A DNA stretch of 64,000 bases from positions 1-64,000 of the IMG/VR virus record IMGVR_UViG_3300027985_001318; one strand, 5' to 3'. This document shows positions 11,738-60,029 of this stretch, piece after piece. The first letter of the stretch is position 1. Every line of letters starts with the position of its first letter. Both the position numbers and the translations under genes were made by a program. Below the pieces are notes generated by a model. The model made no database searches. It had not been told where the DNA came from and saw nothing but the letters and a program-made list of their open reading frames with translations.

Positions 11738-11803
11738 CGCACACCTCTGGTAGTTTGTGAATGATTTAAAATATAGGTAAGTCCATAGAATCTGGAATAC
11801 TCT

Positions 11804-37200: not shown

Positions 37201-37320
37201 GCCGATCCAAACTTAATATCTCTGACTGGCGAGACGCGCGAGTTCGATAAAGACAACGATGGGATTGTTTCCATTATGTCTACGTCAGCCAACGCGTCGC
37301 CATGTGCGTTGCACGATGAT
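34219..37320 (+). CDS. Virion RNA polymerase beta-like subunit (phiKZ gp178-like), exon 1
   Basis: NPIHNLKEQEAVT..GTGGR, GVISEATVDSS; ends at ALHDD, the RpoB HDDxxR motif; 1034 codons. Confidence 0.9.
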
Positions 37321-37716
37321 CAAATTCGGGTCCGGTTGGTGAGTAATTACCAACTGAGCGCTTCTTAATTGACGGGAACCCAATTGTAATCTAAAGCCTT
37401 GTACACCAACCCAATCAGGGAAACCTATTGGCGGCTGAACTAATCACTCAGGTATGGTAACAGAGACAAGGATGAGGCTATTTGGCCGAAATGGGGAATC
37501 ACGCAGCAAAGCTCCTAAGGTTCTACGGAATACGGAGTGGGTCCAACGACTATGGGAGTTCATCGCCCATACACGAGCAAGTGCCGTGGAAATAGAAGCC
37601 CCCTCTAGTGAGGGTGAAGATATAGTCTGAACATCCAAGGAAAACTTGGAGCAGTCCTTTACTGTCGGGAGACAGCGAGGGGCGGGGTGGCTTAACGACC
37701 CATCCGAACAAAATTG
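37321..37716 (+). mobile_element. Group I self-splicing intron (IA2-like, no homing endonuclease ORF)
   Basis: P AATTGACGGGAAC 37367-79; Q AATCACGCAGC 37497-507; R GTCCAACGACTATG 37541-54; S AAGATATAGTCT 37617-28. P3 GCTTCT/AGAAGC, P7 GACTA/TAGTC. Exon-terminal U pairs with G in P1; terminal G at 37716. Confidence 0.93.
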
Positions 37717-41300: not shown

Positions 41301-42034
41301 CCATTGATGCTGAAGAACGTAAAGAATTTGATCGTGCAATTGAATTGCTTCCTGACTCTGTCTCCAAAGGCCTTAAGGTTGTTTCACCGTCTGACTTACC
41401 GGCCGGTACTTTGTACCATATTTCAACCAATCATAACATCCCGACTTTTATCCCTTGCGTTTCTAAGCGCACTATGGAAGGAGAGGATCGTACCGTACCG
41501 AGGGTTTGTGTTAGTCCGGACGTATTGAAGGCCATGCTTGGCTACGGCGCTGTTTACAGCGATTTCCAGGATTGGGACGAAAAGAAACAGCGTTTGAAGA
41601 ACAACGCTTATTGGATGATCTATCGCTTCGATTTCGACTTGGCGATTCGTCCAGTTAAACGCCTGCTACCGGATCAACGTGATACCGATGAACACTGGTT
41701 AATCACTTACTCCAAAAAGACTCGCGAGTATAAACCCACTAAAATCGGCAAGCTGAAGATGGTTGGTTACAGTACTCAGTACAAGAATGGTCAGATGGTT
41801 GATCGCCTGGAATTGGTGATCGAAGTCACTGGCTCAGAAATCCTTTTCTCTGACGGCGTGCTGTTAACTAAGGGGTTTTATAAACTTTGTCTTTCTAACT
41901 GGAAAGTAAGTAACCGAAAACATACAGAGATTTCGGTTACAAGCACTGCTATCAAGAAAGACGAGTACGACGCTTACATGAGAGAACGGGTTTCTCTTGA
42001 ACATTTACCACCATCTGCTTCCTGGGGGTCATGA
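41297..42034 (+). CDS. Putative ADP-ribosyltransferase-fold virion protein
   Basis: LYHIS...FIP...GEDRTVPRVCVSPD...DTDEHWL gives an H / S / E pattern; C-terminal VSLE-HL-PPSASW. Confidence 0.45.
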   Translation: MTIDAEERKEFDRAIELLPDSVSKGLKVVSPSDLPAGTLYHISTNHNIPTFIPCVSKRTMEGEDRTVPRVCVSPDVLKAMLGYGAVYSDFQDWDEKKQRLKNNAYWMIYRFDFDLAIRPVKRLLPDQRDTDEHWLITYSKKTREYKPTKIGKLKMVGYSTQYKNGQMVDRLELVIEVTGSEILFSDGVLLTKGFYKLCLSNWKVSNRKHTEISVTSTAIKKDEYDAYMRERVSLEHLPPSASWGS

Positions 42035-42819
42035 TGGCTACTGCTACTTTGATCTACGCTGGCGATCCATTGGCCGGCACTAACAAGGCCGGTAAGCTCA
42101 AAGTCAACGATGAAGGTTATTACCTGGACGTTGTTTTGGGCGCACTGGATGTTTTCAATTCGGCTGGCGCTATGTATGTTTCTGAACCGGCTTTGCCGTT
42201 GTTCAAAGACAATACTAACCTTCAACGTCAAGCCCAGACACGGAATCTCCGTGGCGAGTACGGCCATCCAAAACGCCTGCCGAACCAATCCATCCAGGAT
42301 TTCGTTCGCCGCTGCTGTACTATCTACGAAGACTGTGTTTCTCACCACATGACTAACTTGCGTTTGATGCCTACCAATCAGCCTGGCGCTAAAGGCAAGA
42401 AGGTTATCCTGATTATCGCTGACGTCAAGCCCTGCGGTCCTCACGGAGCGGTTCTGAAAGCTCAGCTCGATAACCCGAACGAAAACGTCTGCTTCAGCAT
42501 TCGTTCTCTGACCGAAGACGTGATGGTTGGTGGGGTGATCGAGAAACGTCTCCGCACCATCATCACCTGGGATTACGTGAACGAGCCTGGGATCAGTTAC
42601 GCAAACAAGTTCCAAAGTCCTTCTCTGGAATGCGTGTATGGTGATGATGTGATTATCACGGCCGATATCGTTCGTTCGTTGCAGTCTGACTACGAAGCTT
42701 CTGGCATGGGCAATGAGAGTTACGGCCTGGCACTGGAAAGCGTGGTGGCTGCTTTCGGACTTGCTGAGCTCGAGCACAAGCAGAAAGAATTCGCTGTTCC
42801 TCCTAGCGCCAGCTGGTAA
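42031..42819 (+). CDS. Prohead maturation serine protease (phiKZ gp175 / T4 gp21-like)
   Basis: LRGEYGHP, VSHH, FSIRS, TWDYVNEPG; C-terminal SLE and ALE candidate autocleavage sites. Confidence 0.88.
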   Translation: MMATATLIYAGDPLAGTNKAGKLKVNDEGYYLDVVLGALDVFNSAGAMYVSEPALPLFKDNTNLQRQAQTRNLRGEYGHPKRLPNQSIQDFVRRCCTIYEDCVSHHMTNLRLMPTNQPGAKGKKVILIIADVKPCGPHGAVLKAQLDNPNENVCFSIRSLTEDVMVGGVIEKRLRTIITWDYVNEPGISYANKFQSPSLECVYGDDVIITADIVRSLQSDYEASGMGNESYGLALESVVAAFGLAELEHKQKEFAVPPSASW

Positions 42820-42822
42820 CCG

Positions 42823-42855
42823 AATAAGAGAGGGCAAGTGCCCTCTCTTATTTTT
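42823..42855 (+). terminator. Intrinsic terminator
   Basis: AATAAGAGAGGGCA-AG-TGCCCTCTCTTATTTTT. Confidence 0.85.
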
Positions 42856-42867
42856 ACGGTTTAAAAA

Positions 42868-42893
42868 TATTTGAGACCTATATCCTTTAGGTG
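42868..42893 (+). promoter_or_regulatory. Putative early (vRNAP) promoter
   Basis: TATTTGAGACCTATATCCTTTAGGTG, just after a terminator at the start of an accessory operon. Confidence 0.65.
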
Positions 42894-42953
42894 ATATAAA
42901 TAACCTCGCCTGCGAGCGCTGTACAAACTTTACTACTTTTAAGGGATTAGAAA

Positions 42954-43082
42954 ATGGACTATGTAAATCGCCTTGGCTGCAACCGCAAAGAAAAGCACAG
43001 CACTCTGGAAACTGTGCTGTCTGTAGTACTTTTCAACCTGGCTTGGGTTGGGATCGTTGCATGGAGTTACTTCACTCTGTAA
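42954..43082 (+). CDS. 42-aa single-TM small protein (below ORF-track cutoff)
   Basis: AAGGGA SD; MDYVNRLGCNRKEKHSTLETVLSVVLFNLAWVGIVAWSYFTL*. Confidence 0.6.
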   Translation: MDYVNRLGCNRKEKHSTLETVLSVVLFNLAWVGIVAWSYFTL

Positions 43083-43103
43083 GGTTTAGGGAGTCTATGA
43101 CTC

Positions 43104-43149
43104 CCCTCCTCTAAGACATCGCTGGCATCTAGGATGTTTTAGAGGAGGG
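43104..43149. repeat. 17-bp inverted repeat
   Basis: CCCTCCTCTAAGACATC-N12-GATGTTTTAGAGGAGGG (one G-U pair). Confidence 0.8.
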
Positions 43150-43238
43150 TCGTATAAAAATACAGCTTTCCTTTTTGTGTGAAACGTCGACGATTCATAC
43201 AGCATTTTTCTCAATAACTCAATCTAAGGAAACAGACT

Positions 43239-43721
43239 ATGTCTGATCAAATCGTTCTGAAAGAAATCACTCAAGCCACTTCTGATGCCGCCAAGGGCAA
43301 GTTCACCATCGGCTCCGCCGGTGTTACCAACTTCGATGCTGCCGGCAGCTTCGAGCAATACCTGACCACCAACGAAGTGGGTCTGACCCCCGCCCAGGTT
43401 TCCACTGCCTATCAAGCCATGACCGACTGGTCCGCCGGGACCAGCCACGCCTTCGGCCAAGCTTCCCTGGAAGCCATGATCGCAGATCCCTCGCTGGCCA
43501 GCACTGAGCTCAAAGCTAACGTCGTCAAGGGCGTCGACTACTCCGCCACCTTCCGTCGCGAAACCATGGTCTCCAACGGTGACATGAACAACCCGCAACG
43601 CGTGCCGGCCTACGGCCGTCTGAACGCCGAGATCGTTGTCAACGCCTGTGCCAACAAGGGCGAGTTCGGCAAGGTACGCAAGAGCCTGGCTGCCGCAGCC
43701 CGCGAAGCCTTCGGCAGCTAA
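43239..43721 (+). CDS. Hypothetical protein, probably highly expressed
   Basis: 160 aa; AAGGA SD; strongly C-ending codons. Confidence 0.8.
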   Translation: MSDQIVLKEITQATSDAAKGKFTIGSAGVTNFDAAGSFEQYLTTNEVGLTPAQVSTAYQAMTDWSAGTSHAFGQASLEAMIADPSLASTELKANVVKGVDYSATFRRETMVSNGDMNNPQRVPAYGRLNAEIVVNACANKGEFGKVRKSLAAAAREAFGS

Positions 43722-43724
43722 CTA

Positions 43725-43952
43725 GTGACCAAGGTAACCAGAGTAGTTAACGAAAATTCTCCGCTGGCCGGTAAATGGTCACGTCCTTGTAGTGTGAAGT
43801 TTGAGTTCCACGACATCGATCATGCTAACAAGTTTGCCGAAGTCATGTCTGACCTTCTAACCAAGGCTAGTGGTGGCGGAGATTTCGAACTCAACGGACT
43901 TACTGTTGGACACGACGTTAACTGCTTGGGAATCGTAGTTGAAGCTCCTTGA
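43725..43952 (+). CDS. Hypothetical protein
   Basis: 75-aa ORF followed by a terminator. Confidence 0.5.
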   Translation: MTKVTRVVNENSPLAGKWSRPCSVKFEFHDIDHANKFAEVMSDLLTKASGGGDFELNGLTVGHDVNCLGIVVEAP

Positions 43953-43964
43953 GCTATTAAACTT

Positions 43965-43991
43965 AAAGGAGGGCACTGCCCTCCTTTTTTT
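43965..43991 (+). terminator. Intrinsic terminator
   Basis: AAAGGAGGGC-ACT-GCCCTCCTTT plus T-run. Confidence 0.85.
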
Positions 43992-44038
43992 ATTCTTCAT
44001 AACGACCGTAAATAACCAACAACCAAATGAGGTAAAGT

Positions 44039-44713
44039 ATGAATACCAACGTAACTTATCTAGCCCGCTTGATCGAATTCATGCGTAAACATTTTCCCGT
44101 ACGAGGCCCTCTTCGTATCGATGATTTGAGCCCTGACATCGAAACTATGTTGAGCGAAAACTGGGCTATCTGGCGCAATCTCTTGCTCATTCTGCGGACG
44201 ACAAGTGAACTCGAGCGGCTCATTGGCGCTAAAGTACCGGAAGCGCCAATTGTGGACGATATCTTGGATGATGGTATTGTCGTAGTTAGAAAACCACAGC
44301 CGATGTCCAGCTTGTTTGTCTTTAGCATGATCGTTACAAATCTCGAAAACTTCGACGCTTTGGGTTTGGCAGACCAAGCAAGAAGCCGGGTTTTTATGAA
44401 GGACGTGTTTGCTTGTTTGCAAACCGTGATTAATCAACAGTCGTTGGAAGTGATGAAGAAGGTCTGGGAAATCAAATTTCCTTCATCATCTGGATTTGGT
44501 TTTAATCAACAGGGTCTGCAAAACGACCAGCCTCTCCATCGCGGAGCTCAAAACGTTTTCCAACAGGCCCATCAACCTATCTTTTACCCGATGAGCGAAG
44601 TCATTAAGCCAATAACTGATGGTAAGTTGACTTATGTTTCCGAGCTGATCGCTCAGGTAACTGAGATGCTGGTAGTGAGACCCTCAGGAACAGTAGCTCA
44701 ATCTAACTCCTAA
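44039..44713 (+). CDS. Hypothetical protein
   Basis: 224 aa; GAGGT SD. Confidence 0.7.
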   Translation: MNTNVTYLARLIEFMRKHFPVRGPLRIDDLSPDIETMLSENWAIWRNLLLILRTTSELERLIGAKVPEAPIVDDILDDGIVVVRKPQPMSSLFVFSMIVTNLENFDALGLADQARSRVFMKDVFACLQTVINQQSLEVMKKVWEIKFPSSSGFGFNQQGLQNDQPLHRGAQNVFQQAHQPIFYPMSEVIKPITDGKLTYVSELIAQVTEMLVVRPSGTVAQSNS

Positions 44714-44730
44714 ACTTGGTTGTAAAACCT

Positions 44731-44763
44731 ATGGGGAGCACCTCGCTCCCCATTTCTTTTTTT
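44731..44763 (+). terminator. Intrinsic terminator
   Basis: ATGGGGAGC-ACCTC-GCTCCCCAT plus T-run. Confidence 0.75.
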
Positions 44764-44775
44764 AACGAGGTGTAC

Positions 44776-45069
44776 ATGGAACTGTCAAAAACCACGCTCA
44801 GCACACTACAGTCTTTCTACGGCCGTAAAACTCTGGCCCGGAACGACTACCATCACGCCGTAGATATTGCTTCTTCTATCAAACGGGACTCTAAGTTTCT
44901 CGATCGTTTTGGCGAAAACTTTCGTGAATACCTGTCTCGCTGTCAGGCTTTGAAAATCAGTCCGCTGAGTCGTCAGCGTTACACGACTCTCGCCAAGACG
45001 CTCTATCGCGACAATACCGGTATGCGCGATGAGCTGATCGCGTACTGGAGTGAAGTATTGATTCGTTAG
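44776..45069 (+). CDS. Hypothetical protein
   Basis: 97 aa from ATG 44776 with GAGGT SD. Confidence 0.65.
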   Translation: MELSKTTLSTLQSFYGRKTLARNDYHHAVDIASSIKRDSKFLDRFGENFREYLSRCQALKISPLSRQRYTTLAKTLYRDNTGMRDELIAYWSEVLIR

Positions 45070-45225
45070 TGCAGCCAAGGCTTCTGCGAAGCGTTTTAAG
45101 CGATAGTGGAAAGAAACATAGGCCGACGCCTCAAAGCGTCGGCCTTATGTCCCAAAATCGATTTAAAGAGCTTTAAACGAGTTATTTTTATAAATACGTA
45201 ACAGACCAGTATCTTGAGGTGCATT

Positions 45226-45588
45226 ATGGACATATACACTATCCAGATTGGTAAATGGCGAAAAGCTAAAGCCTTGGGTTTTGAGGTCTTGAACATTACG
45301 GTAATGAATGGTGAAAAGCGACTAGCTCCGACGTGGGATTTACTTAGAGCTTGGCAGAAAGGCGAGGTCACAGAAGAAGAGTATCGCACAGAGTATTTTT
45401 GGTTGATGCGAGAAAGCCTTAAAGCTAACCTGGAGTTCTGGCTAGATCTTTCTAAGAAAGAAACTCTAGTACTTGGTTGTTATTGCGCCCCTGGCTTATT
45501 CTGTCATCGTCGCTTGCTCGTAGAAATTTTTACCATGTTCTTTGCTAGTCGTGGAATTATCGCTGAGTACAAAGGGGAGATTGAATGA
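45226..45588 (+). CDS. DUF488-like protein
   Basis: LAPTWDLL, EEEY...Y, LGCYCAPGLFCHR; GAGGT SD before ATG 45226. Confidence 0.65.
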   Translation: MDIYTIQIGKWRKAKALGFEVLNITVMNGEKRLAPTWDLLRAWQKGEVTEEEYRTEYFWLMRESLKANLEFWLDLSKKETLVLGCYCAPGLFCHRRLLVEIFTMFFASRGIIAEYKGEIE

Positions 45589-46109
45589 ATCCGAAAGAAG
45601 ATGGTGTTACTCACATCAACGTCTACTCAAAAGCAGCCACAAAACTAGGTTGTTTTCTGTCCAACTTTTATCCGGTTGATCTTGAAATCTCTGGCGAACA
45701 TTATCGCAGTATCGAAGCTTATTGGTATTCGCTTTGGGCTGAGTCGGTAGTAGATGAAAAAACCGCATCAGGCGGAGCTTATCGTAATCTTCAGAGTAAA
45801 GTCAAAGGTTCGTATGGTTATCAGGCAAAGATGCTTGGTAAGAACCTGATGAAATTAGCTTTTGGCGGGGAGATTCCGGAAGGTAGTCTACCGGATACTA
45901 ATTTCCAGAAGAAGATAATCTCGGCGATTCGTCAGAAGCTCTGGAAATATCCGGAATACTTAGAGCTCTTTAAAGAGTCGCGTTTGCCTTTTGCTCACTA
46001 CTACTTTTTCGGTACCGTAGATAACGCAACGGTAGTGGACGCCAATAGACATCCGTGGTTGATTAATGGATTAGAGAATCTTCGATTCGAACTTAAGGAC
46101 CTGAGATGA
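45585..46109 (+). CDS. NADAR-like protein
   Basis: HINVYSK...LSNF...YRSIEAYWY...AKMLGK...AIRQKL follows the NADAR (YbiA / T4 gp30.3) motif order. Confidence 0.55.
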   Translation: MNPKEDGVTHINVYSKAATKLGCFLSNFYPVDLEISGEHYRSIEAYWYSLWAESVVDEKTASGGAYRNLQSKVKGSYGYQAKMLGKNLMKLAFGGEIPEGSLPDTNFQKKIISAIRQKLWKYPEYLELFKESRLPFAHYYFFGTVDNATVVDANRHPWLINGLENLRFELKDLR

Positions 46110-46291
46110 AAGTAGCTTTAGTCGGTAGTTCACTATGTTTTGAAATGGCCCGTGAATTGGCCAGTAAAGGTATCGAAGTCGAAGTGGTTAGTAAGATACC
46201 GACTGAGGTAAGTATCAACGAGTCCCCAGTTAGTAAGTTTAAGCCACAGCATGAATATAATCGTGTTCCCCCACGTAAACTTTCTAAGTGA
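46106..46291 (+). CDS. Small hypothetical protein
   Basis: 61 aa with overlapping start and stop codons on both sides. Confidence 0.55.
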   Translation: MKVALVGSSLCFEMARELASKGIEVEVVSKIPTEVSINESPVSKFKPQHEYNRVPPRKLSK

Positions 46292-47046
46292 GTGATTCTG
46301 CAATGATTGAAAGAGTTGAGATAGGGAGTGTTTATCTTTCTAGTTCCGGGATCAAATTCCGTGTAGATGACGTTAGAAAGCATGGTCAGGATTGTAGTCT
46401 GGCTATGGTCTGTTATACAAACCTGGAGCCCACTAAAGATTCGCCTACTGGAACCGGTTGGGTAATTAGTGAGTCGTTATTTCTTAAGTTGTTTGATGAG
46501 TGTTCTGAACCTGAACGAGTTGTCTTCTTGGACTTCGACGGGGTCTTCACTATTACCTCAGATGGTGTTTTCTGTAAAGATTACGTTAATCGTCGAGCTA
46601 TTAGTCTACTTAACTCAGTTTTCGAGAAAACTAAAGCCAAGATCGTAGTAAGTAGTTCTTGGCGAGTTGGCGAAGATCGCGTAAGGTTGAATGCCTATTT
46701 AGATCTGGCTGGAATTCGAGGTAAATTACACTTGGATTTTAAGACGACGAGCAAAGGAAGTGGTTTTCGTGGCGAACAGGTCAAGGAGTGGCTTTCGAGA
46801 CATCCTGAGGTCGAGCAATACGCCATTGTTGATGACGAAACAGATTTCTTCGACGATCAATTAAAGAACCTTGTTCATGTCGATATGTACGAAGGTTTTG
46901 GTGGTAGGGATTGCGCTCGGCTACTGTCGGTATTTGGTTTGGCTGTAGATAAGGATTCGCTACGTCCTTTTAAGACTAGGGGCGTTGGTGGCGACCTTAA
47001 GCCGTACTATGACGAATATTTGGAAAGTTTAGAAAAGGGCGGTTAG
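46288..47046 (+). CDS. DUF1653-like domain fused to a HAD (Swiss-army-knife type) phosphatase domain
   Basis: N-terminal V.KH.QD...VCYTNL...WV; HAD motifs FLDFDGV, IVVSSSWR, RG..V..WL, AIVDD. Confidence 0.7.
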   Translation: MSDSAMIERVEIGSVYLSSSGIKFRVDDVRKHGQDCSLAMVCYTNLEPTKDSPTGTGWVISESLFLKLFDECSEPERVVFLDFDGVFTITSDGVFCKDYVNRRAISLLNSVFEKTKAKIVVSSSWRVGEDRVRLNAYLDLAGIRGKLHLDFKTTSKGSGFRGEQVKEWLSRHPEVEQYAIVDDETDFFDDQLKNLVHVDMYEGFGGRDCARLLSVFGLAVDKDSLRPFKTRGVGGDLKPYYDEYLESLEKGG

Positions 47047-47139
47047 TCCTTTTCTTTTTTAGGTTTTGTTACCACCAATTGATTTATTCGCCTAAAGCTG
47101 AAAGCAAAGGATTCGTTGGAGAGAAATTGAATCCCAACG

Positions 47140-47165
47140 AATCTCAGACCTATATGTCTAAAGTG
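47140..47165 (+). promoter_or_regulatory. Putative early (vRNAP) promoter
   Basis: AATCTCAGACCTATATGTCTAAAGTG; 17 nt identical to the site at 58962. Confidence 0.7.
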
Positions 47166-47226
47166 GTAATAGAGAAAAGAATGGATGGTCCATTCTCTCT
47201 AGCCAATACACTTAGAGAGGTGAGCT

Positions 47227-47478
47227 ATGAATTGGGTAAATATCGATAAGGCCGAAGGCCTGGCTTTGCTGCAAGCTAACGGTTACTGGCTGAAGGGTAC
47301 TTCAGCCAAGCCGCTGAAACGTCTGGAAGGGACCAAGAAAGTGGTCTGGTTTCAGCCGCAGCGGAAGCTGGTGGTCTTGATTGACCATCACCTACCGATC
47401 GGTCATAATGGCCACAACAAGGTTTTGTTGGAGAATTGCAGTTCTCCGGTGTGGGAAGAAATTCAACTGGAGGTTTAA
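47227..47478 (+). CDS. Hypothetical early protein
   Basis: 83 aa; GAGGTG SD. Confidence 0.7.
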   Translation: MNWVNIDKAEGLALLQANGYWLKGTSAKPLKRLEGTKKVVWFQPQRKLVVLIDHHLPIGHNGHNKVLLENCSSPVWEEIQLEV

Positions 47479-47479
47479 T

Positions 47480-47647
47480 ATGGAAAACGAAGAAAAGCGA
47501 ACAGCGGCGCAAAGCCGTAATGAGGAGATGGTTTCCATCTCCTACGACGCTGGCAAAAAGGCCGGTGAAGTCGAGTCCTTTAACAAAGGTTTCGTGACAG
47601 GTATTCTGTTCACCTGTCTGATAGGTTGGCTCTTCAAAGGGAAGTAA
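47480..47647 (+). CDS. Small membrane protein (55 aa)
   Basis: GGAGG SD before ATG 47480; C-terminal hydrophobic FVTGILFTCLIGWLF. Confidence 0.65.
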   Translation: MENEEKRTAAQSRNEEMVSISYDAGKKAGEVESFNKGFVTGILFTCLIGWLFKGK

Positions 47648-47650
47648 CGG

Positions 47651-47899
47651 ATGGCCGTAAAGAAAACATACCAGGGAAAGAAATACAAACTTTCCTTGGT
47701 TGAATATCCGAAGACTCGTCGTTATGAGATCCACGGGTTCGATAACGAGGACGGAGTCTGGATCTGCAATACTAAGACCAAACTCCGGACTTATGACTAT
47801 TACGCAGCCAACGAACAGTTCATGTCGGAAGTTCGTGAACTGGAGCGTGATGGCGTAGAGTTCTCCGAGGTCTATCTCGGCGGACATAACTGGCTGTAA
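47651..47899 (+). CDS. Hypothetical early protein
   Basis: 82-aa ORF in the same operon. Confidence 0.65.
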   Translation: MAVKKTYQGKKYKLSLVEYPKTRRYEIHGFDNEDGVWICNTKTKLRTYDYYAANEQFMSEVRELERDGVEFSEVYLGGHNWL

Positions 47900-47901
47900 G
47901 T

Positions 47902-47931
47902 AGAGGGAGGCTTACGCCTCCCTCTGTTTTT
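47902..47931 (+). terminator. Intrinsic terminator
   Basis: AGAGGGAGGC-TTAC-GCCTCCCTCT-GTTTTT. Confidence 0.8.
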
Positions 47932-47952
47932 ATTCTCTCAAGGAGCAATGAA

Positions 47953-48375
47953 ATGACTTTTACTGAAATCCTGTCTCTGATCAACGCAAACGCGCTTAGC
48001 GCCGATAAACAAAATAATACCGTACCTGAACGGGCGATAGTTTACGCCGTGGAGCGTAAACTGGTGTCCGATCTCACCGGCAATGTTCTCATCAGCGCCA
48101 ATGATAAAATGGTAAGAAATGCGATGCGTGGGATTTCATTGGAAGATATAGTGCTCTTCCAGGAAGTAGATTCCTTTGTCATGCGCCTTTTCAGAATGGT
48201 CGATGAGCTGGCTACTGCGGAGGAAGAGGTCGCAAAGGCCATGGCTGAACCTGAGCCGGACAAGAAGTTGGTAGCTGAGCATGATCGCCGAGCGATGAGT
48301 CGGCGTAGCTCAATTAAAGATCTGATTGGACTCATTAACGGCGAAGTTCATAGCTTCGCAAAAAATAAAAGCTGA
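47953..48375 (+). CDS. Hypothetical protein
   Basis: 140 aa; AAGGAG SD. Confidence 0.7.
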   Translation: MTFTEILSLINANALSADKQNNTVPERAIVYAVERKLVSDLTGNVLISANDKMVRNAMRGISLEDIVLFQEVDSFVMRLFRMVDELATAEEEVAKAMAEPEPDKKLVAEHDRRAMSRRSSIKDLIGLINGEVHSFAKNKS

Positions 48376-48399
48376 GCCGGACCAGTGCCGAGTAAGCGT

Positions 48400-48432
48400 A
48401 AAAAAGGAGGGCTTTCGCCCTCCTTTTTTTTT
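48400..48432. terminator. Bidirectional intrinsic terminator
   Basis: AAAAAAGGAGGGC-TTTC-GCCCTCCTTTTTT between convergent genes. Confidence 0.88.
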
Positions 48433-48434
48433 GC

Positions 48435-49301
48435 TTACAGCTTCAGGAAGGAGCTGTTGGCTTCCTCGATCTGCTCGGCATAACCGTTACCGTGCTGAAC
48501 ATCAGCATCGATACTATCGGCGAATGCCGGGGCCAGGTTCGGGTTAACGCCAGACATGTTCAGTGAATCGAGCACGGTCTGGGCGTAATTACGAACACCG
48601 TAACCGTACTGAGTGATGGCGGAGAAAGTCACGGAGACTTCTACGTTCTCACCACCGGCGGAGATGTCACGAGAACCTTCGATCGGACCGGAGGTGTTCG
48701 GCATCATGTTGGTGCACAGCCAGGCTTCAACAACTTCCCGGTGCGTCACGTCCGGTTCGATGAACAGAACGGTCATGCCGGTGTATTGCGGAGTGGGGTT
48801 GATCTTCTTGGTCAGGCCACGAGTGACGACCATGGGGATCTTGTTGGTCGGATCACCCAGAAGGTTGAGGATCCAACCTTCCATGGTGTTCTTGACCGGC
48901 TTACCGCGCTTTTCTGGCCAGGTAAAGGCAGGTTCGGAACGTTCACGAGTAACGTTCCCGACGTCTTGTTGCATTTCACCGGCGCCGTTCAGCGTGGTTT
49001 CCACCCACTCAACGTTCAGGGTACTACGCAGACCTTCGATCCGAGTAGCGTGACGTTCGACCAGAGCCTTCAGGGCGTCTACCCACAAGGTGGGATCCGG
49101 CAGATCCTGGAAGCCCTCGGGAGCTTGCAACAGAATTGCGATGAGGTTCTTGCGAACGTAGTTTTGGTTACCGGCCAGGTTGTTCAGATCGGGCATATAG
49201 CCCTGCTGGCCACCGTCGATGATATTGGCTGCTGTTGCAAAACGATCGACTTGCATCCCACGCTTGGGATCCAGCACCAACTTAGTTACTGCACTAGCCA
49301 T
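48435..49301 (-). CDS. Tail tube / major virion structural protein (phiKZ gp30-like)
   Basis: 288 aa downstream of the sheath; YVRKNLIAILLQAP, VLFIEPD, AWLCTNMMP; strong codon bias. Confidence 0.85.
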   Translation of the reverse strand: MASAVTKLVLDPKRGMQVDRFATAANIIDGGQQGYMPDLNNLAGNQNYVRKNLIAILLQAPEGFQDLPDPTLWVDALKALVERHATRIEGLRSTLNVEWVETTLNGAGEMQQDVGNVTRERSEPAFTWPEKRGKPVKNTMEGWILNLLGDPTNKIPMVVTRGLTKKINPTPQYTGMTVLFIEPDVTHREVVEAWLCTNMMPNTSGPIEGSRDISAGGENVEVSVTFSAITQYGYGVRNYAQTVLDSLNMSGVNPNLAPAFADSIDADVQHGNGYAEQIEEANSSFLKL

Positions 49302-51354
49302 TGATCAGATCCTCCATCCGATGCGCTTCAACAGTGAAGGACGAGGCCGTCTGCATGTTGTTCGCATACATGTGAATGGTTGCGTGGTTGGAGTACCCGC
49401 GCTGTTCATCCTGGGTAGTGTAGTAGGTTTCCGGAACGATCTGCACGCGGTTGTCGAAACGACCGGTGGTGTTCTCGGTAATCGTCTGATCCGACCGCTG
49501 ACGATATTGTTCGCGAGTCAGGTCGGTACGACCCACCAGGGTACGCCAGGTACGGAAGCAAACCTTTTGGCACTCTACGGCGATCATGACGTTCAACAGA
49601 CTGTTCAGTACTGAGGTGTCGTCGTCGTAGACGGTTTGCATGGCCGGGATGAAGAAAGAACGAGTAGAATAGGACTGAGCCCAGATCAACCCGTTATCCC
49701 AGTCACGGTTACGTACACTGGATTCCTTGAACGTACAGTTCAGGTCACGCAGCATAGTAACGTGGTTGTTTGGATCTACGTCGGGAGCGTATGCGCCGCG
49801 CAGAATACCATCACCGGCACCAGCGTAACGCGACAGCATGGCGGCGATTTCGATGGTCATCGGAACCAGTTTCTTCCACGCGGAGTTGATCAGCTTACCA
49901 GCATGACCGACGATGGCGATACGAGTAACGCCAGTACCGTACAGGACAGATTCCGGTGACAGCTCTGCTGCGGTACGCAACATAACAGCCATAGAGGACT
50001 CGGTTACTGCGTCATTGATCGACAGTGCCACGTCCTGGGTAGAAACGGCAACCCAGAGGTCCTTACGTACAGCGGTAACACCCATCAACGCCCGCTTGGT
50101 TTCGGCATCGAAACCGGTGTCGTAGATAACGCTCTGCGGGAACACAGCGACGTCCTTGAACTTATTGGTGAGATCACCGTAGTTCAGGAACTCGTTACGA
50201 CACATCTCGTTATAAGCTGTGTCGCCCATGGTACCATCAGCACCGCCACCGGCGTAGAAGGTGGAATTCTCGGTAAAGCTCAGGCCACCAGACAGAACAT
50301 CTGCCACCGCAAAGGTGTGGTAGGGACGACCATCGATGTCCACTGCGGTCAGCAGGTTCATCAGGTACTCGCCACCATCGACCAGATCGGGATTGGCCTT
50401 CTGTTCTTCAGCGTAGATCAGACCCAGGACTTCAGCGATTTGGTCATGGTAGAAGTGCGCGGCACCGAAGGGTGCATATACCGGAGCCAGGCCAGTGGTG
50501 GGATCGTCATCAACGTAGTTGGCGTCGAAGGCTTCATCGATGAAGTACTCGGTACTGGTACGGTCATCGAAAGAACCGGGCTTCAGACTGAAGTTGATGT
50601 AACGAGCACTGTAGATGGTCTCGGTTACGTTCGGGGTGGAACGAGCGTTGGGACGCTCCACCAGCTGCATCCGGTACACGAAAGCGTTGATGGCGTTAAC
50701 CAGACGTTCGTCTTGCGGAGTAGCGGAATCGGTGGTCGGCGACCACATACGCAGCCCTACGTTGTCACCGAACTTACCGAAGTCGTTCAGTTCACCGTCA
50801 AAGAACGGGTAGAGCGTGGACTGGGTGCCCAGGTCAGCATCGGTTTGGGTACCGATCTTGGATTGAGCTGCCCCAATGGCGTGGGTGGGGGCGTTGTCGT
50901 AGACGAACTTGGCCAGGTAACCATCGATGGTAGAACCGGTGTCGATAGCTTGGCCGTTAGCGTCCAGAACCAGATCACCGGAAGCATTGCGCTGGTATAC
51001 CGGCAGTTTGGTTTTCAGCAGATCCAGGTAAATGCTTACACGAGACTTTTTGGCATCGGCGGGGATCAGACGTTGGTAAACGGTCTGGTTAGCTTCGGCC
51101 GCAAAAACCTCGACCATGAACGGAGTAGCATGGGTAGCGTACTCGCTCCGGTAATTGAAAGACTCAGCTCCGTAAATGCCAGTAGCATCAGCCGGATTCA
51201 GAAAAGTTGCCTTATCAGAACCACGTTGAGCAAAGAACATTACGTGAGGAGTATGAATCGGAAGTGTCTCAACTCCCGGGTCCACCCTGCGTGCTGAAGA
51301 GTCTTTGATACCCTCCAATTTAAACTGCGGGGCGGCGTTCAAGAATTCTGACAT
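49294..51354 (-). CDS. Contractile tail sheath protein (phiKZ gp29-like)
   Basis: 686 aa; NAAPQ...GIKDSS, FAQRG, YDTGF...K, PESVLYGT, TVYDDDTSVL; AAGGAG SD. Confidence 0.9.
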   Translation of the reverse strand: MSEFLNAAPQFKLEGIKDSSARRVDPGVETLPIHTPHVMFFAQRGSDKATFLNPADATGIYGAESFNYRSEYATHATPFMVEVFAAEANQTVYQRLIPADAKKSRVSIYLDLLKTKLPVYQRNASGDLVLDANGQAIDTGSTIDGYLAKFVYDNAPTHAIGAAQSKIGTQTDADLGTQSTLYPFFDGELNDFGKFGDNVGLRMWSPTTDSATPQDERLVNAINAFVYRMQLVERPNARSTPNVTETIYSARYINFSLKPGSFDDRTSTEYFIDEAFDANYVDDDPTTGLAPVYAPFGAAHFYHDQIAEVLGLIYAEEQKANPDLVDGGEYLMNLLTAVDIDGRPYHTFAVADVLSGGLSFTENSTFYAGGGADGTMGDTAYNEMCRNEFLNYGDLTNKFKDVAVFPQSVIYDTGFDAETKRALMGVTAVRKDLWVAVSTQDVALSINDAVTESSMAVMLRTAAELSPESVLYGTGVTRIAIVGHAGKLINSAWKKLVPMTIEIAAMLSRYAGAGDGILRGAYAPDVDPNNHVTMLRDLNCTFKESSVRNRDWDNGLIWAQSYSTRSFFIPAMQTVYDDDTSVLNSLLNVMIAVECQKVCFRTWRTLVGRTDLTREQYRQRSDQTITENTTGRFDNRVQIVPETYYTTQDEQRGYSNHATIHMYANNMQTASSFTVEAHRMEDLING

Positions 51355-51503
51355 CTTGATCTCCTTGGCAATTATACTTTAGTCGACTAAATCGTATGGC
51401 AATGTAGCATCCTAAAAAGAAACCACACTTCATAGTGATAGCCAGTTTCTATAGTGGATGTGTATTTTTTAACGTTCTTTATTAAAGAAAGAGGTCTATA
51501 GCA

Positions 51504-52430
51504 ATGTTTAAAACCCCTTATGAAACCACAGTGGCTCGCCACTCCGCAATGAACTCTATCACGTCAAGTCTGGCGGTTGCTTTTTCCAACCAAGAACTAG
51601 GTTATGCTGGTATCTCAGGCAACGTTCTGGTTTTGACTGGTTTGAAAAACAGTGCCGTCCGTGTTCCTCCTTTTACTCATCCGGTTGTTTTTGAAGATGC
51701 TTACAAAAATAAGCAGATCGCCATCGATGCGCGTAGCTGTGTGGCGGTACGTAATAATGGTGGTGAGGTGATCAATCCGCGCAATCTTCCAGAGTTCGCT
51801 TTGCTGGCTTATCGAGCCGTTACGCAGAAATGCTGGATGGCTGGCAACTACAATGACATCAAAAACATTTCTCCGATTATTGGCGGTATCTACAGTCGCT
51901 GGATTTCCGAAACCATCACCCGGCAATTCCAGCTGGCCCCGGACGTGCAATTGAAGCTGGCGATTCTTTCTGCTTTCTTCTATATCTGTCAGTTCATTCC
52001 CAAAGACGCGTTCGATCCCAAGGAGGACCTGAAGCACGCCGCCCAAGTGGCTCGTTACACTGGGGTGTCTGTAGACTTCGCGAAGAACTCACTGGAAGGC
52101 ATTGGCCATATTGAAGATCTGAAGGAATTCTCAGACCTGGTTCGTTCTCTGAAGCTTTCAGTTCGCCTGGATAAATTCGACCACGCCATCATGCTCACCA
52201 TACTGACCAATTATTGGCTCAGTAATCGTGATCGTGAAATGGTTGCTGTGGCACTCGAGTACCCGCCGACCTTTGTAACTTTGGTTTATCAGGCCATTGC
52301 CGAGCGCGGATATCAGAAAACCAGACTCGCTGATCTGATCCTGCGTAACTTCGACAAAGGCGATAACCTGAAGCAGTTGGCTATGAATTTCAAACAGCTG
52401 GTAAATGTCTGGAAAGAATCTCAGCTGTAG
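51504..52430 (+). CDS. Conserved phiKZ-like protein (gp28-like by synteny)
   Basis: 308 aa; PYETT, PPFTHP, VALEYPPTF; divergent from the sheath. Confidence 0.75.
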   Translation: MFKTPYETTVARHSAMNSITSSLAVAFSNQELGYAGISGNVLVLTGLKNSAVRVPPFTHPVVFEDAYKNKQIAIDARSCVAVRNNGGEVINPRNLPEFALLAYRAVTQKCWMAGNYNDIKNISPIIGGIYSRWISETITRQFQLAPDVQLKLAILSAFFYICQFIPKDAFDPKEDLKHAAQVARYTGVSVDFAKNSLEGIGHIEDLKEFSDLVRSLKLSVRLDKFDHAIMLTILTNYWLSNRDREMVAVALEYPPTFVTLVYQAIAERGYQKTRLADLILRNFDKGDNLKQLAMNFKQLVNVWKESQL

Positions 52431-52449
52431 TACTTAACGGGAGTTTAAC

Positions 52450-54993: not shown

Positions 54994-54994
54994 G

Positions 54995-56656: not shown

Positions 56657-56661
56657 TTAGC

Positions 56662-56694
56662 CAGGAGTAGGTGGGTTCTGCCCACCTACTCCTG
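56662..56694 (+). other. 14-bp hairpin immediately before the terminase SD
   Basis: CAGGAGTAGGTGGG-TTCTG-CCCACCTACTCCTG then AGGAGG; no U-tract. Confidence 0.7.
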
Positions 56695-56705
56695 AGGAGG
56701 CTCCT

Positions 56706-58901: not shown

Positions 58902-58933
58902 AAAGAGGAGGGCGAAAGCCCTCCTCTTTTTTT
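58900..58933 (+). terminator. Intrinsic terminator
   Basis: AAAAGAGGAGGGC-GAAA-GCCCTCCTCTTTT plus T-run. Confidence 0.88.
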
Positions 58934-58961
58934 CCCTAAGCAATAAAACTTAAAATAAATA

Positions 58962-58987
58962 AATCTCAGACCTATATGCCTTAGATG
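58962..58987 (+). promoter_or_regulatory. Putative early (vRNAP) promoter
   Basis: AATCTCAGACCTATATGCCTTAGATG after an AT-rich tract. Confidence 0.7.
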
Positions 58988-59038
58988 AAGTAAAGGGAAA
59001 TAGATGGTCTATTTCTTACTCTAACTGAGGATACAAAA

Positions 59039-59452
59039 ATGAATATACGTCTTGTTCGTGAGGCATACCTGGTTGCTTCCAGAGACCCGCAATACTTCCT
59101 GCTCGTTAGCATGCTGACAGGAGAGTCAGCGAAGATTTTTAAACACCTCGAGCTGGTAGGGCTAGGGGACAATAGTTGGGATCGGGAGCTCAAACTGCGT
59201 AGAGCAGTAAAAGAGAAAATGGGATTCAGTTGGGATTCCGATGCAGAAAGATTTATCGAAAGGATCCTCTGTCCCAACTTGCTCAACTGGCTCCGTCGAT
59301 GGGCATTTGATAGAACGATCAGTAGTGGTCAGGTCTTCGACCTGACAGGTTTTGAACCCCGCCCTGCAGTACTGATGTCCTCACGCACTGCACATGAAGA
59401 AGCTGCGATTGCTTCTGCTCTGGCCAATTTGCACCGCGCTACTCGCGGTTAG
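59039..59452 (+). CDS. Hypothetical early protein
   Basis: 137 aa; GAGG SD. Confidence 0.7.
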   Translation: MNIRLVREAYLVASRDPQYFLLVSMLTGESAKIFKHLELVGLGDNSWDRELKLRRAVKEKMGFSWDSDAERFIERILCPNLLNWLRRWAFDRTISSGQVFDLTGFEPRPAVLMSSRTAHEEAAIASALANLHRATRG

Positions 59453-59461
59453 GAGACAACA

Positions 59462-60001
59462 ATGAATATTAAAGTAGAACTTGAGTCACTGGTAAAAGCT
59501 ATTGCTTTTACCACCAATACGTCTGGTCTGAATGAGACCAGCATCCGCTGGATGCCTGACTGGCAAACCTTCATCGGGGTCAATGACTCCGTCCATGGAA
59601 TTGGGGTAGGGATTAATTTCCCTACCAAAGGCCGGATGGTACTTTTCCACAAACTGTTGGTAATCGATTACCAACTCGCAGGGGAACTTGGATTAGTAAA
59701 CGGTGAGTTCTCTTACTGGAAGGATTGTTTCTTCCAGATCTTTGTAGAGCTGCTCGCCAAGGTACACGCCGTCGGCTGGGACGAAGACAAGCTGGTGAGC
59801 GAATTTAAGGTTCGCTTCACAGAAAGTCGTGAGCTGGCCCTCAAGACCCGTAGCGATCGCCATATGAAACTGACGTCTATAGATCTTGGCTTGGAAAGCG
59901 TCAAGCACCGACGCTCCATGAACTCAATCTGTTCTACTGGGATTATGTTCACGGTCTTCGCATTTACGTTGGGCTCTGTGATTGCAGAAGCCCGCGGCTA
60001 A
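59462..60001 (+). CDS. Hypothetical early protein with hydrophobic C-terminus
   Basis: 179 aa; AGGAG SD. Confidence 0.7.
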   Translation: MNIKVELESLVKAIAFTTNTSGLNETSIRWMPDWQTFIGVNDSVHGIGVGINFPTKGRMVLFHKLLVIDYQLAGELGLVNGEFSYWKDCFFQIFVELLAKVHAVGWDEDKLVSEFKVRFTESRELALKTRSDRHMKLTSIDLGLESVKHRRSMNSICSTGIMFTVFAFTLGSVIAEARG

Positions 60002-60029
60002 GAGGAGGGCGAAAGCCCTCCTCTTTTTT
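60000..60029 (+). terminator. Intrinsic terminator
   Basis: AAGAGGAGGGC-GAAA-GCCCTCCTCTTTTT. Confidence 0.85.

What the first reader, a model, noticed from the sequence alone, without database searches (positions are those of the whole stretch)
47164..47205. Two early leaders share a covarying hairpin with a GA-UGG-UC apex
Seen right after the promoter motif: UAGAG-AAA-AGAAUGGA-UGG-UCCAUUCU-CUCUA (47170-47201) and AGUAA-AGG-GAAAUAGA-UGG-UCUAUUUC-UUACU (58989-59020). Both have an 8-bp upper stem, a 3-nt purine bulge, a 5-bp lower stem and the same apex, but different paired bases. The downstream genes are unrelated. Inference: a selected 5'-leader RNA element, for example a binding site for a phage protein that exports, stabilises or represses early mRNAs. 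This would matter in a phage group that transcribes inside compartments.
Basis: partly seen in the sequence, partly recalled or inferred. Interest (0 to 1): 0.6.

Follow-up and report, generated by a model that had tools for sequence, protein, structure and literature searches.

The report
Early-leader RNA hairpins in jumbo phage
Two early genes of an uncultured nucleus-forming jumbo phage begin with matching RNA hairpins placed right after the phage's own early promoter; they are real and selected, but most likely ordinary 5'-end stem-loops that protect early messages, not a proven protein-binding or export signal.

Summary
Both 32-nt hairpins sit at the stated coordinates. All 13 pairs form in both copies, and 7 pairs differ on both sides. 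They are the only hairpins in the 223.6-kb genome with a UGG triloop and at least 7 Watson-Crick pairs. The motif in front of them is the known chimallivirus virion-RNA-polymerase early promoter; it aligns column by column with the published phiKZ, 201phi2-1, N1M2 and EL consensus sequences. By homology to mapped start sites, transcription begins about 10 nt after TATAT (47165 and 58987), so the hairpins would start at +1/+6 and +3. No RNA data exist for this phage, so the start is inferred. The two belong to a looser set: four of eight long-form early promoters in this genome, and many in Erwinia RAY-like and other jumbo phages, are followed by a 5'-proximal hairpin with a purine-rich 5' arm and varied sequence. 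phiKZ shows no such enrichment. The exact apex occurs only in these two leaders, with a partial third. A covariance model and pattern scans found no other copy. Best reading: 5'-terminal stabilising stem-loops on early mRNAs. A specific protein site or an antitermination element is not excluded.

The parts
47124..47155 (+). Early (virion RNA polymerase type) promoter, long form. It has an upstream element (AAATTGAATCCCAAC GAATC) and the core ATCTCAGACCTATAT.
   Evidence: There are six exact copies of TCAGACCTATAT on the + strand of the genome, plus near-copies, against at most one for the reversed control pattern. It aligns with the published early-promoter consensus sequences of N1M2, OBP, 201phi2-1, EL and phiKZ (PMC7058600 Table 2). 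It follows a terminator-like hairpin at 47031-47055.
47165..47165 (+). Inferred transcription start: G at position 10 after TATAT, the last G of the conserved GTG.
   Evidence: This is an inference. The AR9 early consensus ends TAT-(6N)-G(+1), and the phiKZ and phiR1-37 starts lie 6 nt downstream of the consensus element (PMC5312081). TG at positions 9-10 is kept in nearly all of the 25 forward phiKZ TATATTAC sites and in the sites of this genome. No RNA run holds this DNA.
47170..47201 (+). Leader hairpin 1: 5-bp lower stem, AAA bulge, 8-bp upper stem, UGG triloop. G47165-G47166 can also pair with C47203-C47204, so the inferred 5' end itself would be paired.
   Evidence: Model R1 scores it 45.4 bits.
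47214..47229 (+). Shine-Dalgarno region (AGAGAGGTGA) and ATG of an 83-aa ORFan; the first gene of the operon.
   Evidence: The hairpin ends 12 nt before the Shine-Dalgarno region, so it does not occlude the ribosome-binding site.
58963..58977 (+). Core of the second early promoter (ATCTCAGACCTATAT), preceded by an A/T-rich stretch and by the terminator hairpin at about 58901-58933.
   Evidence: The terminator sits directly after the terminase gene 56706-58901.
58987..58987 (+). Inferred transcription start (G at position 10 after TATAT).
   Evidence: Same inference as for 47165.
58989..59020 (+). Leader hairpin 2: AGUAA/UUACU lower stem, AGG bulge, 8-bp upper stem, UGG triloop. An alternative 10-bp stem with two G.U pairs competes with it.
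   Evidence: Model R1 scores it 43.5 bits.
59026..59041 (+). Shine-Dalgarno region (TGAGGA) and ATG of a 137-aa ORFan.
42866..42893 (+). Third, degenerate copy of the promoter in the window (TTTGAGACCTATATC ... GGTG). Its leader has no significant structure.
   Evidence: The leader fold has z +1.5.
47898..47929 (+). Strong intrinsic terminator inside the first early operon. The gene after it (47953-48375) has no promoter motif.
60000..60025 (+). Strong intrinsic terminator inside the second early operon. The gene after it (60057-60338) has no promoter motif.

Best explanation
The two hairpins are cis-acting RNA stem-loops at the extreme 5' end of early mRNAs made by the injected virion RNA polymerase of a nucleus-forming (chimallin-encoding) jumbo phage.

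Each unit consists of:
- a roughly 40-bp early promoter;
- a conserved GTG, with the start at its last G;
- a purine-rich initial transcribed stretch that forms the 5' arm;
- a pyrimidine-rich 3' arm;
- then about 20-30 nt with little predicted structure, carrying the ribosome-binding site.

The most likely job is generic. A stable stem-loop within 0-5 nt of the triphosphate end would shield early transcripts from 5'-end-dependent decay (pyrophosphohydrolase and RNase E type entry) during the first minutes, before phage proteins are available. A second possibility is that it helps the nascent RNA peel off the template during promoter escape.

The shared apex is best explained by descent of the two leaders, and partly a third at genome position 183,813, from one ancestral cassette, with some added sequence constraint that remains unexplained.

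Shown: the sequences, the pairing, the compensatory changes, their uniqueness in the genome, the identity of the promoter, and the enrichment of 5'-proximal structure.
Inferred: the start site, that the structure forms in RNA, and the stabilising function.
For: - Promoter identity: the motif aligns column by column with published chimallivirus early-promoter consensus sequences. All copies lie on the coding strand; those examined in the window follow terminators and precede small ORFans.
- Position: with +1 at G10 the hairpins start at +1/+6 and +3. In the structured subset of 57 non-redundant sites from 10 phage records, 22 of 25 hairpins start at +1 to +7.
- Enrichment: the leader +1..+45 has mean z -0.83 (Wilcoxon p 1.4e-4), while +60..+105 has mean z +0.16. 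The eight long-form leaders of this genome have z -4.4, -3.9, -2.9, -1.9, -1.6, -1.3, -0.2 and +0.4.
- Diversity: loops and stems differ between leaders (UGG, UGG, GAA, GUGUU and others), as expected if only structure matters.
- Placement: both hairpins end 12 nt or more before the Shine-Dalgarno region, so this is not a translational-operator geometry.
- Asymmetry: an asymmetric 3-nt bulge at the same place in both copies, and purine-rich 5' arms (64% vs 36%, p 5e-4), argue for a strand-specific RNA feature rather than a symmetric DNA site.
Against: - No transcript data exist, so the start site could be elsewhere. For example, it could be the G of TATATG, which matches the phiKZ late initiator TATG; the hairpin would then begin at +12 to +15.
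- If +1 is G10, hairpin 1 without the GG:CC extension leaves 5 unpaired nt, and two other leaders leave 5-7. That is more than classical 5' stabilisers tolerate.
- Apex identity (13/15 columns against 3/17 elsewhere) is stronger than a purely structural role predicts.
- phiKZ early leaders show no such enrichment (mean z -0.09, n = 23), so the feature is not general to the family.
- Sense and antisense strands fold equally well.
- The host and its RNases are unknown.
Confidence: 0.45

Rival explanations
1. Sequence-specific protein-binding site. The apical AAUnGAUGGUCnAUU is recognised by a phage or host RNA-binding protein that co-regulates these two (or three) early operons through stability, translation, localisation or export from the early infection vesicle.
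For: - The apex is far more conserved than the rest of the hairpin (13/15 vs 3/17 identical columns), while the stems keep pairing through double changes.
- It is unique in the genome.
- A third leader, at genome 183,813-183,844, shares AGAG..AAUGG.U.GUCC..CUCU.
- How mRNAs leave the EPI vesicle is an open question (PMC13282480).
Against: - There are only 2-3 copies.
- The other long-form early leaders of the same genome have different loops.
- No copy was found in 316 kb around promoters of related phages, nor after this promoter in IMG/VR or JGI metagenomes.
- No candidate protein is known.
- Two or three paralogues cannot separate constraint from shared descent.
Confidence: 0.2
2. Co-transcriptional element acting on the phage RNA polymerase. 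The nascent hairpin right after the promoter would modify elongation: put- or nut-like antitermination, or promoter-proximal pausing or escape. This would let transcription pass the strong intrinsic terminators inside the early operons.
For: - Both operons contain strong internal terminators followed by genes with no promoter motif (47898-47929 and 60000-60025).
- The hairpins are tied to one promoter subclass: TATATG sites have mean leader z -1.5, against about -0.5 for the other sites (p 0.004).
- The initial transcribed sequence is conserved and purine-rich.
- Antitermination has been proposed for 201phi2-1 (PMC11512511).
Against: - No boxA-like motif occurs in any long-form leader.
- There is a single short hairpin rather than the two-stem put structure.
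- Loops are not conserved across leaders.
- Terminator read-through in these phages may simply be partial.
- There is no functional evidence.
Confidence: 0.15
3. No RNA function. The apex is a palindromic double-stranded DNA operator (half-sites AATnGA / TCnATT) for a dimeric repressor that shuts off these early promoters, or the similarity is neutral residue of a duplicated promoter cassette.
For: - The conserved part is a near-perfect 15-bp inverted repeat lying 15-30 bp downstream of the promoter core.
- It folds equally well on both strands.
- The sense-versus-antisense test is not significant.
Against: - Pairing extends beyond the conserved part into completely different lower stems in both copies, with an asymmetric 3-nt bulge at the same place. 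A DNA operator does not need this.
- Several other leaders use G.U pairs, which pair only in sense-strand RNA.
- Hairpins with unrelated sequences occur at the same offset in other leaders and other phages.
Confidence: 0.1
4. Leader mini-ORF. The conserved apex is a start codon (G-AUG-GUC) preceded by a Shine-Dalgarno-like purine run, encoding 5-6-residue peptides whose translation opens the hairpin. The mini-ORFs are AUG GUC CAU UCU CUC UAG and AUG GUC UAU UUC UUA CUC UAA.
For: - Both apices read AUG GUC, with an in-frame stop inside or just after the 3' arm.
- AAGGG lies 6 nt upstream of the AUG in hairpin 2.
- The leaders at genome 183,8xx and 136,4xx also have AUG or GUG at or near the apex.
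Against: - The Shine-Dalgarno-like run is inside a stable stem.
- The Shine-Dalgarno-like run of hairpin 1 is weak.
- The leader at 201,469 and the RAY-like leaders have no start codon in the loop.
- G/U-rich loops after purine arms produce RUG by chance.
Confidence: 0.05

Closest known systems
Chimallivirus (phiKZ-like) virion-RNA-polymerase early promoters (phiKZ TATATTAC; 201phi2-1, OBP, N1M2, EL consensus sequences; AR9 AAATATATATTAT-(6N)-G+1)
   Same: The core is the same and aligns column by column: TCA-RR-YC-TATAT-NNN-NNNN-GTG. The motif occurs in many copies on the coding strand, upstream of small ORFan operons and (where checked) after terminators. TG is conserved at positions 9-10.
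   Different: This genome, the RAY-like phages and other uncultured jumbo phages use GACCTATAT with G, C, T or A at the next position. A subclass ending TATATG is coupled to structured leaders. phiKZ leaders are short and unstructured. The start site is not mapped here.
5'-terminal stabilising stem-loops of bacterial and phage mRNAs (E. coli ompA leader; the T7 gene 10 leader stem-loop)
   Same: A stable hairpin sits at or within a few nucleotides of the inferred 5' end. It is followed by a largely unstructured ribosome-binding region, and the sequence varies between messages.
   Different: The 5' end is inferred, not mapped. Several leaders would leave 3-7 unpaired nucleotides. The polymerase is a phage multisubunit enzyme working in a vesicle. 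The stabilising effect is untested. This comparison rests on textbook knowledge, not on a tool result.
Lambdoid nut sites (boxA + boxB) and HK022 put RNAs
   Same: RNA hairpins in the leaders of two early operons share a loop but have differing stems. The operons contain internal terminators.
   Different: No boxA-like sequence is present. The loop is a triloop rather than a GNRA-like pentaloop. There is one hairpin rather than the two put stems. The hairpins sit at the very 5' end. The polymerase is not the host enzyme.
Coliphage N4 virion RNA polymerase hairpin promoters
   Same: Both involve an injected virion polymerase, and both have small hairpins with 3-nt loops associated with early promoters (PMC4496689, listed; details from general knowledge).
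   Different: In N4 the hairpin is DNA, lies upstream of +1 at a fixed distance, and is the promoter itself. Here the hairpin lies downstream of the conserved promoter and of the inferred start, at a variable offset. Many promoters of the same type lack it.

Membership tests
Chimallivirus vRNAP early promoter | Extended conserved A/T-rich core of the TATAT(T)AC type with an upstream TTTCA/TCA-RR element | tested here: met
   ATCTCAGACCTATATG aligns with the N1M2, OBP, 201phi2-1, EL and phiKZ consensus sequences. The information profile of 57 sites is shown.
Chimallivirus vRNAP early promoter | Many copies per genome, on the coding strand, in intergenic regions ahead of operons of small genes of unknown function | tested here: met
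   There are 8-9 long-form and about 8 short-form sites, nearly all on the + strand and intergenic. The downstream genes are ORFans.
Chimallivirus vRNAP early promoter | Conserved start 6 nt after the consensus element (G at position 10 after TATAT) | tested here: inconclusive
   The GTG/ATG at positions 8-10 is conserved here and in phiKZ. No RNA data exist for this phage.
Chimallivirus vRNAP early promoter | The phage encodes virion and non-virion split multisubunit RNA polymerases and chimallin | tested here: met
   RNA polymerase beta-subunit PHROGs match at 32588-37368. A ChmA homologue lies at genome 76483-77826, E 6.8e-28. The virion and non-virion sets were not told apart.
5'-terminal stabilising stem-loop | Stable hairpin with no more than about 4 unpaired nucleotides at the 5' end | tested here: inconclusive
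   With the inferred +1, 0-5 nt are unpaired in the two hairpins, and 22 of 25 structured leaders start at +1 to +7. This depends on an unmapped start site.
5'-terminal stabilising stem-loop | Removal shortens mRNA half-life; compensatory mutants restore it | not testable with these tools
   This needs reporter or infection experiments.
Lambdoid nut site | boxA sequence (CGCUCUUA / GCUCUUUAA) next to the hairpin | tested here: not met
   No match within 110 nt of any long-form promoter, except one CGCTCTTA-like hit that lies beyond the start codon, in the coding region downstream of the promoter at genome position 136,433.
Lambdoid nut site | boxB loop conserved among the nut sites of one phage | tested here: inconclusive
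   The UGG loop is shared by 2 of 8 leaders; the others differ.
Any Rfam family | Match to a curated covariance model | tested here: not met
   Over 42000-60000 there were only four sub-threshold chance hits (E 0.47-0.89), none at the hairpins.

The most novel reading that the evidence does not exclude
In one branch of the nucleus-forming jumbo phages, a promoter-coupled RNA module marks mRNAs made by the injected virion polymerase inside the early infection vesicle. The module is a TATATG-subclass early promoter, a conserved purine-rich initial transcript and a 5'-terminal bulged hairpin. A phage factor would read it for export, ribosome hand-off or terminator read-through. The UGG apex would define a sub-regulon of two or three operons.
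Probability: 0.1. Interest if true: 0.8.

Novelty: new member of a known kind. Interest (0 to 1): 0.4.

Why it matters
Chimalliviruses transcribe their early genes with an injected polymerase inside a membrane vesicle. How those first mRNAs survive, leave the vesicle and get translated is an open question (PMC13282480).

A cis element tied to one subclass of early promoters, and conserved as a structure across distant jumbo phages, gives a concrete and mutable handle on that step. It can be tested in a cultured relative, Erwinia phage RAY, whose 271,182-bp record carries the same promoter type followed by hairpins.

If the element is only a 5' stabiliser, it is still useful for annotation. Promoter plus hairpin marks early transcription units in uncultured jumbo phages. 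It could also serve as a portable leader for expression driven by these polymerases.

Tried and rejected
- **Close relatives for orthologous covariation.** None exist in the collections. The best GenBank RNA polymerase match is 34% aa identity, megablast found nothing, and the best IMG/VR terminase match is 47-54%.
- **RNA evidence.** No RNA run holds the stretch. The holders are two DNA metagenome samples that may be the source, one of them labelled hydrothermal vent. Read laying was therefore not used, because contigs cannot show a start.
- **Promoter plus GATGGTC apex scan.** It found 0 hits in IMG/VR and 20 in JGI/ENA metagenomes. All 20 are chance matches inside coding sequence, with 2-4 bp 'stems'. 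One came from a human-gut metagenome assembly. It is a bacterial-looking coding hit and was not pursued.
- **Covariance model R1.** Nothing scored above 22 bits beyond the two training copies. The 20-22-bit hits I examined are terminators, and two other leaders score 20.7 and 15.5 bits. Nothing was found in relatives.
- **Long-range pairing of positions 1-10 with the region before the Shine-Dalgarno sequence.** It looked attractive in several leaders but is not better than mismatched promoter-gene pairs (permutation p 0.07). Those bases probably lie upstream of the start.
- **Consensus fold of the RAY-like leaders.** MAFFT/RNAalifold gave no common register. The 5' arm is conserved in sequence, but the 3' arm sits at varying distances.
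- **Sense versus antisense folding as a strand test.** Not significant.
- **Supplementary start-site tables.** Those of the phiKZ and 201phi2-1 papers, and Ceyssens 2014, are not held.
- **Other resemblances.** CsrA-type GGA loops, RNase III substrates and pairing of the loop to a tRNA CCA end were considered from memory only and not tested; nothing in the sequence supports them.

Full report
**What the window is.** The window is the first 64 kb of a 223,650-bp IMG/VR virus record with direct terminal repeats and 47% G+C. It encodes split multisubunit RNA polymerase beta subunits (32588-37368), a tail sheath, a terminase and a 2417-aa tail fibre/transglycosylase protein. It also has a homologue of the phiKZ nuclear shell protein ChmA at genome position 76,483-77,826 (E 6.8e-28). 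It is therefore a nucleus-forming phiKZ-like jumbo phage (chimallivirus). It is distant from cultured ones: the best RNA polymerase identity is 34%, to Xanthomonas phages. The only sequencing runs that hold it are DNA metagenomes, one labelled hydrothermal vent.

**The observation.** Both hairpins read exactly as described.
- In the two-row alignment A1, all 13 pairs are standard in both copies.
- Seven pairs differ on both sides: four of five in the lower stem and three of eight in the upper stem. Slid registers pair at only 42-50%. The lower stems share no sequence, so their four changes rest on positional alignment.
- Identity is concentrated in the apex: 13 of 15 columns around the loop are identical, against 3 of 17 elsewhere.
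- In the whole genome, on both strands, these are the only hairpins with a TGG triloop and at least seven Watson-Crick pairs. Only 20 hairpins with a 3-nt loop and at least eight pairs exist on the + strand, about a third of them G+C-rich stems flanked by A/T runs, i.e. terminator-like.
- Both follow an identical 16-mer at nearly the same distance.
- Hairpin 1 is stable (-13.2 kcal/mol, z -3.3). Hairpin 2 is A/U-rich and marginal alone (-8.9 kcal/mol, z -2.0).

Two qualifications apply. In the full leader, the optimum for hairpin 2 extends the upper stem with two G.U pairs and drops the lower stem, so the bulged architecture is possible but not unique. Both hairpins also fold equally well on the minus strand.

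**The promoter.** The motif is not new. Table 2 of PMC7058600 lists bioinformatic early-promoter consensus sequences for N1M2, OBP, 201phi2-1, EL and phiKZ. The sequence here, TCTCA-GA-CC-TATAT-GCC-TTAG-GTG-AA, aligns with them column by column.
- The review PMC7598289 states that every polymerase-encoding jumbo phage has such a motif upstream of early operons, centred near -10 and recognised by the virion polymerase.
- In this genome I find two forms. The long form is AAAtcGAATCCCAAnnnAATCTCAGACCTATATG..GTG, at 47149, 58971, 96544, 136433, 152071, 183792 and 201453, with degenerate copies at 42877 and 184790. The short form is TTTT..ACCTATATCAC...GTG, at about eight sites.
- Nearly all sites are on the + strand and intergenic, and they lie ahead of genes on the same strand; the downstream genes checked are small ORFans.
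- The same core, followed by GGTGA, occurs in a 271,182-bp IMG/VR record that matches the length listed for Erwinia phage RAY, and in several other 226-313-kb uncultured jumbo phages. In every record the sites lie almost entirely on one strand.

**Where transcription starts.** No RNA data exist for this phage, so the start is inferred.
- For AR9 the mapped early consensus is AAATATATATTAT-(6N)-G(+1). For phiKZ and phiR1-37 the start lies 6 nt downstream of the consensus element (PMC5312081).
- The 201phi2-1 motif, derived from the -50..+1 windows of mapped starts, ends in GTG.
- In phiKZ itself nearly all of the 25 forward TATATTAC sites carry TG at positions 9-10, as do the sites here.
- I therefore place +1 at the G ten bases after TATAT: 47165 and 58987. 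Hairpin 1 then begins at +6, or at +1 if G47165-G47166 pair with C47203-C47204 as in the optimum. Hairpin 2 begins at +3.
- An alternative start is the G of TATATG, which matches the phiKZ late initiator T(-3)ATG(+1). It cannot be excluded and would add nine nucleotides.
- Pairing of those nine nucleotides with the region before the Shine-Dalgarno sequence looked suggestive. It is no better than in mismatched promoter-gene combinations (p 0.07).

**The two hairpins belong to a looser set.**
- The eight long-form leaders of this genome have z-scores for +1..+45 of -4.4, -3.9, -2.9, -1.9, -1.6, -1.3, -0.2 and +0.4. The short-form leaders show none.
- The leaders at 136,449 and 183,808 share the architecture: a 4-6-bp lower stem, a 5'-side bulge and an upper stem. 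The leader at 201,469 has a continuous 10-bp stem with a GAA triloop closed by the same G-C and A-U pairs.
- The leader at 183,808 is sequence-related to hairpin 1 (AGAG..AAUGG.U.GUCC..CUCU). Model R1 finds it at 15.5 bits and the 136,449 leader at 20.7 bits.
- Across 57 non-redundant sites from ten phage records, +1..+45 is more structured than shuffles (mean z -0.83, Wilcoxon p 1.4e-4). The region +60..+105 is not (+0.16).
- In the structured subset, 22 of 25 hairpins start at +1 to +7, and the 5' arm is purine-rich (64% vs 36%, p 5e-4).
- Sites ending TATATG have more structured leaders than those ending TATAT followed by C, T or A (mean z -1.5, against about -0.5 for the other sites, p 0.004).
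- phiKZ's own 23 early leaders show no enrichment (mean z -0.09). The feature is therefore lineage-specific.
- In RAY-like phages the first roughly 12 transcribed bases (GAUAAAGAG..) are conserved in sequence, while the complementary 3' arm sits at varying distance. No single alignment register exists.

**How specific the apex is.** GA-UGG-UC follows this promoter only twice. R1 finds nothing else above terminator-level scores in the genome and nothing in 316 kb around promoters of relatives. A promoter-plus-apex pattern finds nothing in IMG/VR and only chance coding hits in metagenomes.

**Interpretation.**
- The position at the inferred 5' end, the diversity of loops, and the placement 12 nt or more upstream of the ribosome-binding site fit a generic 5'-terminal stem-loop best. 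Its likely role is to protect early mRNAs, or to aid early elongation or release. This is the reading I commit to, at 0.45.
- The strong apex conservation keeps a specific binding site alive (0.2).
- Both operons contain strong internal terminators followed by promoter-less genes, and the hairpin is tied to a promoter subclass. This keeps a put/nut-like antitermination or pausing role alive (0.15), although no boxA-like motif is present.
- A DNA operator or neutral residue (0.1) is disfavoured by the diverged yet paired lower stems, the asymmetric bulge, and the G.U pairs in sister leaders.
- The apex reads G-AUG-GUC and opens 5-6-codon mini-ORFs in both leaders. This is noted as a low-probability alternative (0.05).

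**Literature.** The papers I could read describe promoters, terminators and 5'-UTR-derived short RNAs. They are the phiKZ dRNA-seq and ONT-cappable-seq studies, the 201phi2-1 study, the AR9 study, a polymerase review and a 2026 jumbo-phage review. In the keyword look-ups I ran on them I found no mention of a hairpin coupled to early promoters. That is an absence in the held texts, not proof of novelty.

**Limits.**
- The start site, the RNA nature of the structure and any function are inferred.
- The sample of promoters includes a few chance coding hits. Filtering on upstream A+T leaves the result unchanged (46 sites, mean z -0.88, p 6e-4).
- The related phages are not independent of one another.

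Noticed in passing
window 47110-47143: A 10-bp inverted repeat (GATTCGTTGG ... CCAACGAATC, 14-nt spacer) has a 3' arm that is part of the promoter's upstream element. It could be a read-through RNA hairpin or a regulatory site masking the promoter. It is not present at the other promoters.
   Followed up: no
G000:C1 about 137,879-137,930 (outside the window): A short-form early promoter is followed directly by a hairpin (CAGACTG..CAGTCT) and a run of six T, ahead of a leader of about 70 nt. It looks like a promoter-proximal attenuator or a short 5'-UTR-derived RNA, of the kind reported for phiKZ and 201phi2-1.
   Followed up: no
window 47898-47929 and 60000-60025: Strong intrinsic terminators lie inside early operons, immediately followed by a ribosome-binding site and a gene with no recognisable promoter. 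This implies read-through, antitermination or an unrecognised middle/late promoter.
   Followed up: partly
window 43965-43987, 48400-48429, 58901-58933, 60000-60025 (also 47898-47929): The terminator stems form a sequence family (GGAGGGC-loop-GCCCTCC flanked by A and T runs). This recalls the conserved terminator motif described for phiKZ and 201phi2-1.
   Followed up: no
window 47152-47156 and 58974-58978; all long-form promoters: The long-form promoters end in TATATG, which contains the phiKZ late-promoter initiator TATG (G = +1). These sites could be dual early/late promoters with two starts 9 nt apart. Across phages the TATATG subclass is the one coupled to leader hairpins.
   Followed up: partly
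window 47185-47202 and 59003-59023: The conserved apex contains an AUG. It opens mini-ORFs of 5 and 6 codons, both starting Met-Val, that end inside or just after the 3' arm. In hairpin 2 it is preceded by AAGGG at a Shine-Dalgarno-like distance.
   Followed up: partly
G000:C1 183,813-183,844 and 136,448-136,481 (outside the window): Two further early leaders carry hairpins of similar build. The first shares sequence with hairpin 1 (AGAG..AAUGG.U.GUCC..CUCU), with a UUG rather than a UGG loop.
   Followed up: yes
upstream elements of the long-form promoters, e.g. window 47124-47145; also locus L086 (a 249,640-bp IMG/VR record): The upstream element AAAATCGAATCCCAAAA..AATCTCA contains a direct repeat of GAATC. 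It is shared almost verbatim with one promoter of another uncultured jumbo phage, suggesting that record is the nearest available relative in promoter type.
   Followed up: no
loci L016, L031, L043, L020, L051, L052, L055, L079 (RAY-like and other jumbo phages): The first roughly 12 transcribed bases after the inferred start are conserved in sequence (GAUAAAGAG / GAAUAAGAG, resembling UAAGGAG). The purine-rich start of the G000 leaders (GAAGUARAG) is similar. This may be a downstream promoter element or a Shine-Dalgarno mimic.
   Followed up: partly
window 20995 (+) and 11777 (-): Two further short-form promoter-like sites (CCTATAT + 7 nt + GTG, or TTTAAAT) lie 34 nt ahead of start codons. The one at 11777 is one of very few on the minus strand.
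   Followed up: no
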